A stretch of 26,564 bases of DNA from positions 1 to 26,564 of the IMG/VR virus record IMGVR_UViG_3300005859_000008; one strand, given 5' to 3'. This document shows positions 7,791 to 10,554 of this stretch, piece by piece. Made by a program: the position numbers and the translations under genes. The notes beneath the pieces were generated by a model, which saw only the letters and a list, made by a program, of their open reading frames with translations, was not told the origin of the DNA and made no database searches. Numbering within the stretch: the stretch's first letter is position 1; every line of letters starts with the position of its first letter.

Positions 7791-8726
7791 CTATATCTCA
7801 AGTTCTAATTCATCTTTTTCTTTCTTTATCTTTTTCTTTTCCTTTAAAATTTCATTTACAATTTTGTAATTTCTAATTAATTCAATTGTAAGGCTGTCAA
7901 GACCTATCTTTCTTAATTTGTTAGCATATCTTGTGTATTTATTGTCAATTTGCCATTTATTGTATACTAGAATATAAGCGTTCATAACTTCTAGAATTTT
8001 TCTGTTAGTCAAATCATATTCAAATGGAAAATGAATCTTGTCTAAAAATTCAAAAAGTTGTTCTTTTTCTTCTTCCGTAATTTTATACCTTTCTCTACTT
8101 GTTTTTTGATTTCCTACATATTTTCTTGTTCCATCAAACCAAAAAATCTCTCTATATGCCATAGTTTTGGAATATGTAGCTGTGTCCATACTATCCGCAA
8201 AATCGAAAGCTTGTAGAAAATATGGTGCAGACATTCCAAGGACATGTAGATAAGGGACTTTCCTTCTTACATAATAAACCCATGGAAATGTATAGATTAA
8301 AACTTTTAATTTGCTAGATGCTACAAGTCCTCCTATTGCAAAATAGTAAGTATATTGTTTGTAAAAATCTATAGCTTCATCTACATCTTGAATTGGATAG
8401 ATATGGATAACTGGAATAATTTTTTCTATCCATTCTATTTTTGTATACAAGTATTCAAAATATTGAAAATTTCGTTTGTCTAGAGGAGAAAACATACTTG
8501 CAATATCAAGAGAAAAAAAAGCATATGCATCTAATTTTTTGTATTTTTCTAGAATGTCTTTCACAGAAATATGTAGACCATATAATGCAATTTGGTAACC
8601 TCCGCTATCTATCCAAGTCTCATTTTTCCATGTCTTTTTTCTAAATCTTAACTGATTAATTAGAATCGGAAAGTCAGTCTTCAGAATATATGATGTTGTT
8701 GAACTTAGACCAAAGACAAGTTTCAT
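7791..8726 (-). CDS. tRNA-guanine transglycosylase (TGT)-fold protein, SIRV2 ORF310-like (311 aa)
   Basis: TGT-superfamily motifs IDSGGYQ, FSLD, IPVIH, IGGLV, HVLG, DSMD. Size and pairing with the permease match SIRV. Confidence 0.88.
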   Translation of the reverse strand: MKLVFGLSSTTSYILKTDFPILINQLRFRKKTWKNETWIDSGGYQIALYGLHISVKDILEKYKKLDAYAFFSLDIASMFSPLDKRNFQYFEYLYTKIEWIEKIIPVIHIYPIQDVDEAIDFYKQYTYYFAIGGLVASSKLKVLIYTFPWVYYVRRKVPYLHVLGMSAPYFLQAFDFADSMDTATYSKTMAYREIFWFDGTRKYVGNQKTSRERYKITEEEKEQLFEFLDKIHFPFEYDLTNRKILEVMNAYILVYNKWQIDNKYTRYANKLRKIGLDSLTIELIRNYKIVNEILKEKKKIKKEKDELELEI

Positions 8727-9919
8727 TATTGTTCTCCATTAATCACCTTCTTTCTTAAGACGTATATAATTCCTCCAATTAAAGGCAATAGTAATATTCT
8801 TAATATTGTATATATTAGATTTCCTTCTATTACGAAATTATAGAATATTGGGTTTTGAAGTCCTAGATAAAAGAATATAAATATCTGTAGTGCTAAACTT
8901 ATTATTACACTTAAAAATAATAATTTATTATTTGTTAATTTTAAAAATGTTAAACTTACAATTAAGAAATTCCAGAAAATGAACAATATACCAGTAAATC
9001 CAAATGAAATTGAAAATCCTAAAAGATTTTCTAAAACGTTAGCGATTGTATCAACAGTAAAGATTAACAATAAAATGTTAGGCGTAAGTTTTGTAAATTT
9101 TTCTGGGAGAATTCTATCAAATGTAAAGTTTTGAATTAAACGACTTTGAATTATAGCATTCACAAAAAGATAGCTTAGATACCAGATTGGAAATAAAGCA
9201 AACAATATATTCAAATTAGAAAAGCTATCTAATATTGATAATATTGTAACTACTAAATAACTTCCAAAATATCCAATTTTTATTGCTTTATTTACGTTCT
9301 TTACTTCTCCAGCTATATAACTAATTGCATTTATGAATAGAAACATAGACAAGTCAAATAGTAAGGCTGAAAGTAAGGTATTCGATATTGTGAAGTTTTG
9401 TATCTGGAAATGAAAATTTGAGACTGGGAGAAATATTGATACAAGTATCTGTAGAATAGCTAATCCGTCTACTATATAAGCATAAATTGATTTTCTAATT
9501 ATACTAATTATAGTTATTATAAATAATAATTCTGAAATTAGAAATTTATCAATTAGTGAAATATTAAAATTCATAAGTACTAAATTTGTTAGGACTGGAG
9601 CTGAGAATATATACGTTAGCCATAACGAGATTCCGAAAATTGTGTAGAATTTCGGGGAAAATGTATTTCTAATGTAAGCATAATCCCCACCGTTTAATGG
9701 AATTTTCTTGGTTAGAATATAATACATTACTAATAATGGAATTTCAAATATTGCTCCTAATATTACAGCAATTAACAAGTTTACATTTTTCATCATTTGA
9801 GAGACAAAAATTGGATAACTTATTCCGCTCAAAATTCCCATGTAAAGAAGATTGATAGAAAAAATATCTAATGAATTGAAATTTTTTATAATTCCTGAAC
9901 TTTGTCTTTTGAATTCCAT
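8726..9919 (-). CDS. APC-family amino acid permease-like membrane protein, SIRV2 ORF399-like (397 aa)
   Basis: Many TM segments; APC motifs PLNGGDYAYIRNTF and SYIAGEVKN; stop overlaps the TGT start (TAATG). Confidence 0.88.
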   Translation of the reverse strand: MEFKRQSSGIIKNFNSLDIFSINLLYMGILSGISYPIFVSQMMKNVNLLIAVILGAIFEIPLLVMYYILTKKIPLNGGDYAYIRNTFSPKFYTIFGISLWLTYIFSAPVLTNLVLMNFNISLIDKFLISELLFIITIISIIRKSIYAYIVDGLAILQILVSIFLPVSNFHFQIQNFTISNTLLSALLFDLSMFLFINAISYIAGEVKNVNKAIKIGYFGSYLVVTILSILDSFSNLNILFALFPIWYLSYLFVNAIIQSRLIQNFTFDRILPEKFTKLTPNILLLIFTVDTIANVLENLLGFSISFGFTGILFIFWNFLIVSLTFLKLTNNKLLFLSVIISLALQIFIFFYLGLQNPIFYNFVIEGNLIYTILRILLLPLIGGIIYVLRKKVINGEQ

Positions 9920-10039
9920 ATCTCAGTTCAAGTTTTATGACTAATTTAAGCCTTTTCAAAAATTTAAAGAAATACATTAATTATGAATTTTTTATTATAA
10001 TGATAATGGATATTTAATATTTAAAGTTTATAATTTCAT

Positions 10040-10465
10040 TTAAGAAAGAAATTTTAAAATGTCATTTGTATCTTTTAACAATTCTATTTTTTGTCTGGAA
10101 TAATTTTTCAGATGATAAAGTGCATGTGGAAATTTCGCATTTCCCATTCTATTCATAAATATCATTATTAAAGAATTTTGTTCATATAACATTCTAAACC
10201 AGGAAGGAGTAGGGTCAAATGGTAGATATAATAAAACTTCACTTCCATTTTTATTACTTTCTATAGCTTTTATTATAAATGGTTTTTTAATAGAAAATGG
10301 TGGGTTACAATAAGAATGATTTGGCCATAATTTTTCTACTGCATTGAATTTAGTTTTATCTAAACAAACGTCTATAAATTTTAATTCATTTGTAATAATA
10401 TTATAAACTGCTTCAGGTGTTGGTTTATTGTCATGTATAGCCCTTTTCGGATATTTAAGTGTCAT
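10040..10465 (-). CDS. Phage-type DNA N6-adenine methyltransferase (Dam-like, PF05869-type; 141 aa)
   Basis: PTPEAVY, IDVC, catalytic YCNPPFS, KA, then LYLPFDPTPSWF, in the order typical of the small phage Dam family. Own TTTAATTTGTC promoter. Confidence 0.82.
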   Translation of the reverse strand: MTLKYPKRAIHDNKPTPEAVYNIITNELKFIDVCLDKTKFNAVEKLWPNHSYCNPPFSIKKPFIIKAIESNKNGSEVLLYLPFDPTPSWFRMLYEQNSLIMIFMNRMGNAKFPHALYHLKNYSRQKIELLKDTNDILKFLS

Positions 10466-10554
10466 GGTTCTATTACATTTTTATTTTTATGACAAATTAA
10501 AACGTTATTTAAAATTTAAAGAAATAAAAATGTCCTAAAACATATATAATATTC

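What the first reader, a model, noticed from the sequence alone, without database searches (positions are those of the whole stretch)
7791..10465. TGT-fold enzyme + coupled permease + Dam methylase: candidate base-modification locus with its own precursor importer
Seen: three co-oriented genes. The permease stop overlaps the TGT start. The TGT-fold protein keeps the DSGG and second-Asp catalytic motifs but has no Cys residues, so it lacks the Zn site of canonical tRNA TGTs, and it is too short for the PUA domains of archaeal TGT. Known: viral TGT paralogs (DpdA) exchange guanine in DNA for 7-deazaguanines as anti-restriction, and archaea make preQ0/archaeosine. The TGT-permease pair exists in SIRV1/2, but to my knowledge its function is unresolved. 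Inference: the enzyme acts on viral DNA, the APC permease supplies a base or amine precursor, and Dam was recruited beside it as a genome-protection island.
Basis: partly seen in the sequence, partly recalled or inferred. Interest (0 to 1): 0.72.

Follow-up and report, generated by a model that had tools for sequence, protein, structure and literature searches.

The report
Rudivirus DpdA-like transglycosylase, permease, inserted methylase
A Yellowstone-type archaeal rod-shaped virus carries the permease plus guanine-swapping enzyme pair already catalogued in its relatives as a probable DNA-modification gene, and this strain alone has gained an adenine methylase beside it; the pair is known but untested, and the permease's role remains open.

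Summary
Three co-oriented minus-strand genes lie at 7791-8726 (TGT-fold, 311 aa, no Cys, DSGG), 8726-9919 (12-TM APC permease, TAATG overlap) and 10040-10465 (PF05869 Dam, NPPF). The window is a new SIRV-like rudivirus, about 78% nt identity to SIRV5/8.

The TGT-fold protein is a DpdA-family enzyme:
- It is 40% identical to STSV2 DpdA, whose virion DNA carries dCDG.
- hhalign gives 93% probability against the genetically validated phage CAjan DpdA.
- Its SIRV orthologues were listed as "DpdA-only" viruses by Hutinet et al. 2019.
- The missing Zn site and PUA domain are traits of the whole family, not of this virus.

The host S. islandicus makes preQ0 itself, so an importer is not required.

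The permease belongs to the amino-acid/amine APC family, not to any known nucleobase or preQ0 transporter. It sits next to the TGT gene in three different arrangements, and every TGT-bearing rudivirus has it. It also occurs without TGT (SSRV1, ARV2), and TGT occurs without it, paired instead with DUF5591/ArcS2. The functional link is plausible but unproven.

Dam is a strain-specific insertion. It is absent from 25 related loci, it is flanked by a duplicated 42-nt promoter core, and its nearest relatives are in fuselloviruses.

Verdict: a new member of a known kind, of moderate interest.

The parts
7791..8726 (-). DpdA-family, TGT-fold guanine transglycosylase. 311 aa, Zn-less, no PUA domain. 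Catalytic residues D40 (DSGG), D74 (LDI), H108, G132, H161-x-L-G164 and D181.
   Evidence: ORF and motifs. Profile hit to ArcTGT 1iq8, E=1.5e-4. AF2 pLDDT 92, with Foldseek top 50 all TGT. phrog_887 at 1e-63. 40% identity to STSV2_15 (DpdA). hhalign against CAjan DpdA, 93.3%, E=2.6e-7. Invariant residues across 30 sequences.
8726..9919 (-). Compact 12-TM permease of the APC (amino acid/polyamine/organocation) family. Translationally coupled to the TGT gene by a TAATG overlap.
   Evidence: PF13520 at 25.5 bits. phrog_8289 at 1e-187. Family profile hits GkApcT 6f34 at E=2e-15 and other APC transporters. TM count. Only 59 representatives at E<=1e-3 in 1.84 billion proteins. Immediately upstream of TGT in all 24 SIRV-like loci.
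8733..8736 (-). GGAG Shine-Dalgarno-like motif 7 nt upstream of the TGT ATG, inside the end of the permease ORF.
   Evidence: Junction sequence read (AATGGAGAACAATAATG). The function is inferred.
9920..9975 (-). Permease promoter/leader, the proximal copy of the duplicated 42-nt core (TATTTCTTTAAATTTT...GTCATAAAA) that carries a TATA-like box.
   Evidence: Alignment with the single intergenic region of the nearest relative L016.
10040..10465 (-). Orphan DNA N6-adenine methyltransferase of the phage Dam family (PF05869), 141 aa, NPPF motif. A strain-specific insertion.
   Evidence: Pfam 34.6 bits (cutoff 28.1). phrog_111. PADLOC orphan MTase. Absent in SIRV8 and in 25 other IMG/VR loci. Best relatives are fusellovirus SSV NL01B at 68% aa and Sulfolobales virus YNP1 at 61%.
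10466..10554 (-). Dam upstream region, the distal copy of the duplicated promoter core plus the ancestral upstream half of the intergenic region.
   Evidence: 34/42 identity between the two copies, with 0 of 1000 shuffles reaching the score. Both copies align to the one intergenic region of L016.

Best explanation
This is the accessory permease-DpdA module of SIRV-like rudiviruses, plus a recently inserted orphan Dam methylase.

The 311-aa protein is a Zn-less, PUA-less TGT-fold enzyme of the DpdA family. Inference: after replication it exchanges a fraction of the guanines in viral dsDNA for a 7-deazaguanine base. That base is most simply preQ0, or a derivative made by the host's own archaeosine pathway. 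The modification would blunt host nuclease-based defences.

The APC permease is transcribed from the same promoter and is translationally coupled to the transglycosylase. It is a real transporter of the amino-acid/amine family. Its link to the transglycosylase is suggested by conserved adjacency only, and its substrate is unknown.

Dam is an independent, horizontally acquired m6A methyltransferase. It landed in the permease leader and is now driven by a duplicate of the permease promoter, so in this strain all three genes are probably expressed together.

Shown: gene structure, fold, catalytic residues, family relationships, co-occurrence pattern and insertion anatomy.

Inferred: DNA as the substrate, the identity of the base, the anti-defence role and any permease-enzyme cooperation.
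For: Fold and catalytic residues.

DpdA membership:
- 40% identity over 87% of the length to STSV2_15. Cui et al. 2023 (PMC10516641) call this protein DpdA and found dCDG in STSV2 virion DNA.
- hhalign gives 93.3% probability, E=2.6e-7, over columns 21-253 against CAjan DpdA. Hutinet 2019 showed this protein is essential for preQ0 insertion into phage DNA.
- The CAjan alignment extends through the C-terminal helical region, past the point where the ArcTGT alignment stops.
- phrog_887 at 1e-63.
- SIRV and SRV orthologues are listed as DpdA in Hutinet 2019 Supplementary Data.

Host supply: the S. islandicus FolE, QueD, QueE, Gat-QueC and Arc-TGT accessions are given in Hutinet 2019 Supplementary Table 2. 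No preQ0 genes or DUF5591 were found among 28 window ORFs scanned.

Coupling:
- TAATG overlap plus a GGAG motif.
- The permease lies 0-6 nt upstream of TGT in 24 of 24 SIRV-like loci.
- The two genes are convergent and overlapping in SRV.
- TGT precedes the permease with overlap in metagenomic contig L011.
- Every rudivirus with TGT also has the permease.

Dam.
Against: - No nucleoside analysis of any rudivirus DNA was found in the searchable literature.
- STSV2 carried only 0.04% of its G as dCDG, so the modification may be sparse or may differ here.
- Pfam, NCBIfam and PADLOC models for TGT/DpdA do not hit the protein.
- The permease occurs without TGT in SSRV1 and ARV2.
- TGT occurs without the permease in STSV1/2/4 and in 11 cellular loci.
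- In SBRV1 the two genes lie 4.6 kb apart.
- A tRNA substrate has not been excluded.
Confidence: 0.6

Rival explanations
1. Dedicated importer model. The permease imports the base or amine that the transglycosylase installs, so the two genes form an obligate two-step pathway. It would be analogous to the YhhQ preQ0 transporters encoded in some phage DpdA clusters.
For: - Adjacency is kept in three different gene arrangements, with translational coupling in two of them.
- All TGT-bearing rudiviruses, across four genera, carry the permease.
- Within this TGT clade the partner is either the permease or DUF5591/ArcS2, never both. This hints that the two partners are alternative ways of providing or processing substrate.
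- There is a precedent: CAjan gp41, a 'putative preQ0 transporter', lies inside its dpdA/que cluster.
- The APC TM1 and TM6 signature residues are invariant in the viral permeases.
Against: - The nearest solved and cellular relatives are amino-acid/amine carriers, with no nucleobase carriers among them. There is no similarity to YhhQ.
- The host makes preQ0 itself.
- SSRV1 and ARV2 keep the permease without any TGT. At the TGT position they have an unrelated 207-aa gene.
- Free 7-deazapurines in hot acid springs are undocumented.
Confidence: 0.2
2. Two unrelated accessory genes. The permease is an auxiliary metabolic gene that boosts amino-acid or amine uptake, or alters the membrane, during infection. 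The transglycosylase acts independently. Adjacency reflects shared ancestry of a variable genome arm rather than function.
For: - Each gene is found without the other.
- The genes are unlinked in SBRV1.
- The region is a hotspot for accessory-gene gain. It holds the Dam insertion and two paralogous phrog_12570 ORFs that SIRV8 lacks at this place.
- Both genes are missing from the small-genome rudiviruses ARV1, ARV3, MRV1 and SMRV1.
Against: - Adjacency survives an inversion (SRV) and an order swap (L011), with overlapping ORFs. This is unexpected for unrelated genes in ~30-kb genomes of ~50 genes.
- No rudivirus has TGT without the permease.
Confidence: 0.3
3. tRNA-directed enzyme. The viral TGT-fold protein modifies host or viral-stage tRNA, for example by adding extra preQ0/archaeosine, to tune translation of the AT-rich viral genes. 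DNA is not its substrate.
For: - RefSeq annotates the orthologues as queuine tRNA-ribosyltransferase.
- The best PDB sequence hit is ArcTGT.
- The catalytic triad is the same as in tRNA TGTs.
Against: - The protein lacks the Zn subdomain and the C-terminal/PUA domains that ArcTGT has.
- The host already has ArcTGT.
- The C-terminal half aligns with phage DpdA, not with ArcTGT.
- The STSV2 homologue is associated with modified DNA.
- Cellular homologues sit in operons with HerA- and NurA-like DNA-processing proteins.
Confidence: 0.1

Closest known systems
DpdA of Sulfolobus virus STSV2 (STSV2_15) with ArcS2 (STSV2_16); Cui et al. 2023, PMC10516641
   Same: - Same protein family: 40% identity over 87% of the length.
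- Same invariant catalytic residues and no Zn site.
- A virus of Sulfolobales.
- No preQ0 synthesis genes in the virus.
   Different: - STSV2 pairs DpdA with a DUF5591/ArcS-core protein and has no permease.
- The rudiviruses pair it with an APC permease and have no DUF5591.
- The two groups form separate, well-supported clades.
- STSV2 DNA has been analysed (dCDG at 0.04% of G). Rudiviral DNA has not.
Phage DpdA1 (Escherichia phage CAjan gp35, Enterobacteria phage 9g); Hutinet et al. 2019, PMC6884629
   Same: - Remote but significant homology: hhalign 93%, E=2.6e-7, 222 columns including the post-barrel helical region.
- Similar length, 306 against 311 aa.
- No CxCxxC Zn motif.
- Same PHROG.
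   Different: - About 22% identity only.
- The phages carry their own FolE/QueD/QueE/QueC and a YhhQ-type transporter.
- The rudivirus carries none of these and has an APC permease instead.
Archaeosine tRNA-guanine transglycosylase (ArcTGT, P. horikoshii 1iq8)
   Same: - TIM-barrel TGT fold.
- The DSGG, LDIP, HxxGxG and D..DSA.Y motifs align.
   Different: - No Cys3His Zn subdomain and no C1/C2/PUA domains. The protein is 311 aa against 582 aa.
- By the alignment, the Gln of the ArcTGT 'IQGS' stretch is replaced by an invariant His108, which CAjan DpdA also has.
- Pfam PF01702 is not matched.
YhhQ/COG1738 preQ0 transporters encoded in phage 7-deazaguanine clusters (e.g. CAjan gp41)
   Same: A virus-encoded membrane transporter sitting beside a dpdA gene.
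   Different: - An unrelated family and fold. The rudiviral protein is a 12-TM APC-family permease whose relatives carry amino acids and amines.
- No evidence was obtained that it transports a deazapurine.
Phage T1/HP1-type orphan Dam methyltransferases (PF05869)
   Same: - Pfam hit above threshold, with the NPPF catalytic motif and a small single-domain size.
- No cognate endonuclease gene is adjacent.
   Different: - Shorter than the model, 141 aa against 169 positions.
- It belongs to a Sulfolobales mobile-element subgroup: SSV, Sulfolobales virus YNP1, an S. acidocaldarius chromosome copy and many hot-spring contigs.
- The target sequence is unknown.

Membership tests
TGT superfamily (tRNA-guanine transglycosylase fold) | (beta/alpha)8 TGT barrel | tested here: met
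   AF2 model pLDDT 92. The Foldseek PDB top 50 are all TGT/QTRT1 at probability 1.00, TM about 0.5.
TGT superfamily (tRNA-guanine transglycosylase fold) | Catalytic Asp in DSGG, base-binding Asp, nucleophile Asp | tested here: met
   D40, D74 and D181 align with the corresponding ArcTGT motifs. All three are invariant in 30 sequences.
TGT superfamily (tRNA-guanine transglycosylase fold) | Match to Pfam PF01702 at the curated threshold | tested here: not met
   No Pfam or NCBIfam TGT hit even at E<=0.1-1. Homology is detectable only with a family profile or by structure.
Canonical tRNA TGT / ArcTGT | Cys3His zinc-binding subdomain | tested here: not met
   The window protein has 0 Cys. No member of the family has more than 3 Cys.
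Canonical tRNA TGT / ArcTGT | C-terminal tRNA-binding domains (C1, C2, PUA) in ArcTGT | tested here: not met
   311 aa against 582 aa. The alignment to 1iq8 ends at chain residue 270. The C-terminus is a helical region shared with phage DpdA.
DpdA (DNA 7-deazaguanine transglycosylase) | Homology to an experimentally validated DpdA | tested here: met
   hhalign against CAjan DpdA: 93.3%, E=2.6e-7, 222 columns. 40% identity to STSV2 DpdA. phrog_887 at 1e-63. Orthologues are listed as DpdA in Hutinet 2019 Supplementary Data.
DpdA (DNA 7-deazaguanine transglycosylase) | 7-deazaguanine nucleoside present in the genomic DNA | not testable with these tools
   This needs LC-MS/MS of virion DNA. No published rudivirus data were found.
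DpdA (DNA 7-deazaguanine transglycosylase) | Source of preQ0, virus-encoded or host-encoded | tested here: inconclusive
   No QueC/D/E, FolE or DUF5591 among 28 window ORFs, but the window is a partial genome. The host S. islandicus pathway is listed in Hutinet 2019 Supplementary Table 2, but the host of this metagenomic virus is not known.
DpdA (DNA 7-deazaguanine transglycosylase) | Match to the bacterial Dpd-system DpdA model | tested here: not met
   PADLOC-DB gives no hit at E<=1. The protein is not a bDpdA.
APC family permease (TC 2.A.3; PF13520/PF00324) | Sequence homology to APC transporters over the whole 12-TM core | tested here: met
   The window protein alone scores 25.5 bits, below the gathering score of 27. 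The family profile A3 hits GkApcT at E=2e-15 over profile positions 23-451, and also xCT, CAT1, LAT2 and AdiC. Cellular relatives pass the Pfam thresholds. There are 12 hydrophobic segments.
APC family permease (TC 2.A.3; PF13520/PF00324) | LeuT/APC fold shown by structure | tested here: inconclusive
   The AF2 model failed (pLDDT 36), so no fold search was run.
preQ0/queuosine-precursor transporters (YhhQ/COG1738, QueT, QrtT) | Sequence membership in one of these families | tested here: not met
   The only Pfam, NCBIfam and PHROG hits are amino-acid or ethanolamine permease models.
Phage Dam N6-adenine methyltransferase (PF05869) | Pfam match above the gathering score, plus the (D/N)PP(Y/F) catalytic motif | tested here: met
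   34.6 bits against a cutoff of 28.1. NPPF at residues 54-57.
Phage Dam N6-adenine methyltransferase (PF05869) | m6A deposited at a defined DNA motif | not testable with these tools
   This needs SMRT or nanopore kinetics, or a methylation-sensitive digest.

The most novel reading that the evidence does not exclude
The rudiviral APC permease is a new type of precursor importer dedicated to DpdA-mediated DNA modification. It would bring in a 7-deazapurine, or an amine or amino acid that becomes part of a hypermodified guanine. In that case 'permease + DpdA' in rudiviruses and 'ArcS2 + DpdA' in bicaudaviruses and Sulfolobales cells would be alternative two-gene solutions to the same substrate problem. 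A corollary is that the cellular DpdA-ArcS2-HerA-X-Y-NurA operon seen here is an archaeal Dpd-like modification/restriction system, which the viral DpdA mimics or evades.
Probability: 0.15. Interest if true: 0.75.

Novelty: new member of a known kind. Interest (0 to 1): 0.42.

Why it matters
Rudiviruses such as SIRV2 are the main laboratory models for crenarchaeal virus-host conflict: CRISPR, anti-CRISPRs and pyramid egress. Even so, whether their DNA is chemically modified has not been reported in the literature I could search.

This locus predicts sparse 7-deazaguanine modification, and in this strain m6A as well. Such modification could affect restriction, CRISPR interference and sequencing-based studies.

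The conserved coupling to an amino-acid-type permease is the unexplained part. If the two are functionally linked, it would reveal a new transporter class for DNA-modification precursors, or a new hypermodification chemistry. If they are not, the permease is a rare case of an archaeal virus encoding a nutrient transporter.

The comparative data also point to an undescribed cellular operon in Sulfolobales that may be the archaeal counterpart of the bacterial Dpd system.

Tried and rejected
- Pfam, NCBIfam and PADLOC scans of the TGT-like protein gave nothing. A family profile and a structure model were needed.
- The AF2 model of the permease, built from a 14-sequence shallow alignment, failed (pLDDT 36). 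No fold search was possible, so I fell back on a profile search against PDB sequences.
- The word-indexed homologue search for the permease returned only close viral copies. The exhaustive profile search was used to reach SBRV1, SSRV1/ARV2, SRV and cellular relatives.
- I tested whether the 207-aa gene that follows the permease in SSRV1 and ARV2 is a degenerate TGT. It is not: hhalign gives 0.4% probability, and it has no Pfam hit and no homologue in the window.
- The gapless repeat finder missed the promoter duplication around Dam because of an indel. A gapped local alignment with a shuffle control showed it.
- Literature searches for rudivirus plus DpdA, transglycosylase, permease or deazaguanine found no main-text treatment. 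The rudiviral entries are only in the supplementary tables of Hutinet 2019.
- phmmer of Dam against PDB sequences gave no meaningful hit.
- I considered that Dam is a conserved part of the module. This was rejected.
- I considered that the missing Zn site is a viral novelty. This was rejected.
Full report
**What the window is.** GC content is about 25%. The region 7791-10465 matches SIRV4-11 (Usarudivirus, Yellowstone) at 76-80% nt identity over its first ~2.2 kb, and SIRV1/2/3 at ~71%. The window is IMG/VR contig UViG_3300005859_000008. It is therefore a new, fairly divergent SIRV-like rudivirus.

**Observation.**
- The 311-aa protein has no Cys and has DSGG at residues 40-43.
- The permease stop and the TGT start overlap as TAATG, with a GGAG motif 7 nt upstream of the ATG.
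- The 141-aa protein has NPPF.

**TGT fold and family.** Curated models miss the protein. Three other lines of evidence establish the fold.
- A 20-sequence family profile (A1) hits P. horikoshii ArcTGT at E=1.5e-4. It aligns DSGG, LDIP, HxxGxG and the D..D(S/T)A.Y motif.
- An AF2 model with pLDDT 92 retrieves only TGTs in its top 50 PDB matches.
- Across 30 family members, N24, D40, S41, G42, G43, D74, H108, G132, H161, G164 and D181 are invariant, and none has more than three Cys.

The missing Zn site is therefore a trait of the whole family.

Three results place the protein with DpdA rather than with tRNA TGTs.
- It is 40% identical to STSV2_15 and to the STSV1 homologue. Cui et al. 2023 treat STSV2_15 as DpdA, next to ArcS2 (STSV2_16, DUF5591), and report dCDG at 0.04% of G in STSV2 DNA.
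- It falls in phrog_887 at 1e-63.
- hhalign against phage CAjan DpdA gives 93.3% probability, E=2.6e-7, over columns 21-253. Genetics showed CAjan DpdA to be required for preQ0 in phage DNA (Hutinet 2019). This alignment runs through the helical C-terminal region, whereas the ArcTGT alignment stops before it.

Hutinet 2019 already lists SIRV1, 2, 4-11 and SRV among viruses that encode DpdA only. The paper counts '12 members of the Ligamenvirales'. [quoted passage not shown] Its Supplementary Table 2 gives S. islandicus FolE, QueD, QueE, Gat-QueC and Arc-TGT. The usual host can therefore supply preQ0.

**Permease.**
- The window protein scores just below the PF13520 threshold.
- An exhaustive profile search of 1.84 billion representatives finds only 59 relatives at E<=1e-3. 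These are the SBRV1, SSRV1/ARV2 and SRV proteins plus longer (466-554 aa) cellular permeases that pass the Pfam AA_permease thresholds.
- A profile of this wider set hits GkApcT, xCT, CAT1, LAT2 and AdiC at E=1e-15 to 1e-8.
- The viral proteins are compact versions with 12 hydrophobic segments in 397 aa. They lack the loops and the C-terminal EIPPE tail of the cellular ones, but keep the invariant TM1 (GxxSG), PxxGGDY and TM6 (AGExKN) signatures.
- Every recognisable relative carries amino acids or amines. None carries nucleobases, and nothing resembles YhhQ.

**Co-occurrence.** The conserved glycosyltransferase served as a marker for which rudiviruses are in the collection. Combined with tblastn of each gene, the pattern is as follows.

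| Gene content | Viruses or loci |
|---|---|
| Both genes | SIRV1-11 and three OM4017xx isolates (permease then TGT, 0-6 nt apart in 24 of 24 IMG/VR loci); SRV (convergent, overlapping); SBRV1 (4.6 kb apart); metagenomic contig L011 (TGT then permease, overlapping, next to a dUTPase) |
| Permease only | SSRV1, ARV2 (an unrelated 207-aa gene follows the permease) |
| Neither gene | ARV1, ARV3, MRV1, SMRV1 |
| TGT without permease | STSV1/2/4 and 11 cellular Sulfolobales loci, almost all with an adjacent DUF5591 |

A maximum-likelihood tree separates a rudiviral, permease-linked clade (support 100/99) from a cellular plus bicaudaviral, DUF5591-linked clade. L011 branches at the base of the latter.

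In summary, no rudivirus has TGT without the permease, and adjacency persists through rearrangements. Each gene can nevertheless exist without the other. This fits a facultative functional link and does not prove one.

**Dam.**
- It matches PF05869 above threshold.
- It is absent at this position in SIRV8 and in all 25 other IMG/VR loci, including the closest relative L016, which is ~90% identical in the flanking genes and comes from the same metagenome.
- Its best matches are a Yellowstone fusellovirus (68% aa, 72.6% nt), Sulfolobales virus YNP1 (61%), a copy in an S. acidocaldarius chromosome (70%) and many short hot-spring contigs.
- Alignment with L016 shows that the single permease-ORF122 intergenic region of the relative is split by the Dam cassette. 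A 42-nt core containing the TATA-like TTTAAATTTT box is present on both sides, at 34/42 identity, and 0 of 1000 shuffles reach that score.

Dam is thus a recent insertion that acquired a copy of the permease promoter. Co-expression with the module is likely, but the 'island' is specific to this strain.

**Mechanism, with confidence.**
- Most likely (0.6): a host-preQ0-dependent DpdA installs a low level of 7-deazaguanine in viral DNA. An independent Dam adds m6A. The permease is co-expressed and has an unresolved role.
- Dedicated importer reading: about 0.2.
- Unrelated neighbours: about 0.3 for the permease question.
- tRNA target: about 0.1.

**Comparison and novelty.** The gene pair is annotated in RefSeq, and the enzyme is already catalogued as DpdA. 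The new points are:
- this divergent virus;
- the explicit permease/DUF5591 partner dichotomy;
- the anatomy of the Dam insertion;
- the cellular operon noted in passing.

I rate the finding as a new member of a known kind, with moderate interest.

Noticed in passing
L012:3706-10587; L045 and L046:8001-15734; L048, L051, L053 (cellular Sulfolobales contigs): Cellular homologues (35-42% identity) of the viral TGT-like protein sit in a conserved six-gene operon: TGT-like, DUF5591/ArcS-core, HerA-like DUF87 ATPase (~535 aa), a ~1010-aa protein with no Pfam hit, a ~222-aa protein with no Pfam hit, and a NurA-like nuclease (~335 aa). The operon appears in 6 loci. The TGT-like/DUF5591 pair alone appears in 11 of 12 loci. 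This is a candidate archaeal counterpart of the bacterial Dpd 7-deazaguanine modification/restriction system. No description was found in the searchable literature.
   Followed up: partly
L042 (Streptomyces gamaensis), L043 (Planomonospora alba JCM 9373, 31,951-bp contig), L044 (Paenochrobactrum glaciei JCM 15115), L047 (Nocardioides koreensis JCM 16022): SIRV2/3-like rudivirus sequence (TGT 66-71% aa identity, with the permease upstream) occurs in genome assemblies labelled as mesophilic bacteria. This is almost certainly contamination of those assemblies. It explains the NCBI name 'MULTISPECIES: tRNA guanosine transglycosylase family protein [Bacteria]' on P0074.
   Followed up: partly
window:6595-7116 (+) and window:7183-7773 (+): Two tandem paralogous ORFs (173 and 196 aa, both phrog_12570, function unknown) lie convergent to the TGT gene. 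SIRV8 has no ORF at this position between its TGT and its ORF53 homologue. This genome arm therefore gains accessory genes repeatedly.
   Followed up: partly
L008:4764-5387 and L009:4764-5387 (SSRV1 ORF28-207, ARV2 gp33): In the two hoswirudiviruses that have the permease but no TGT, a conserved 207-aa protein with no detectable family follows the permease by 10 nt, at the position TGT occupies in SIRVs. It could be a functional replacement or it could be unrelated.
   Followed up: partly
L005:1107-1919 (SBRV1 ORF23-270): SBRV1 encodes a 'phosphoadenosine phosphosulfate reductase'-family (PP-loop ATPase) protein about 2 kb from its TGT gene. QueC and DndC are PP-loop enzymes too, so this could be another DNA-modification gene.
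   Followed up: no
L006:3941-4825 (SRV ORF294): The SRV TGT homologue sits on a very long branch (2.04 substitutions per site) yet keeps all catalytic residues. This suggests rapid evolution under retained function.
   Followed up: partly
window:17866-18681 (-), window:22572-22940 (-), window:16039-17736 (-): Other annotated content of the window: an ATP-dependent ligase-like protein (PF09414/PF01068), an Hjc Holliday-junction resolvase (PF01870) and a 565-aa protein with DUF2341. This is consistent with a rudivirus core genome.
   Followed up: no
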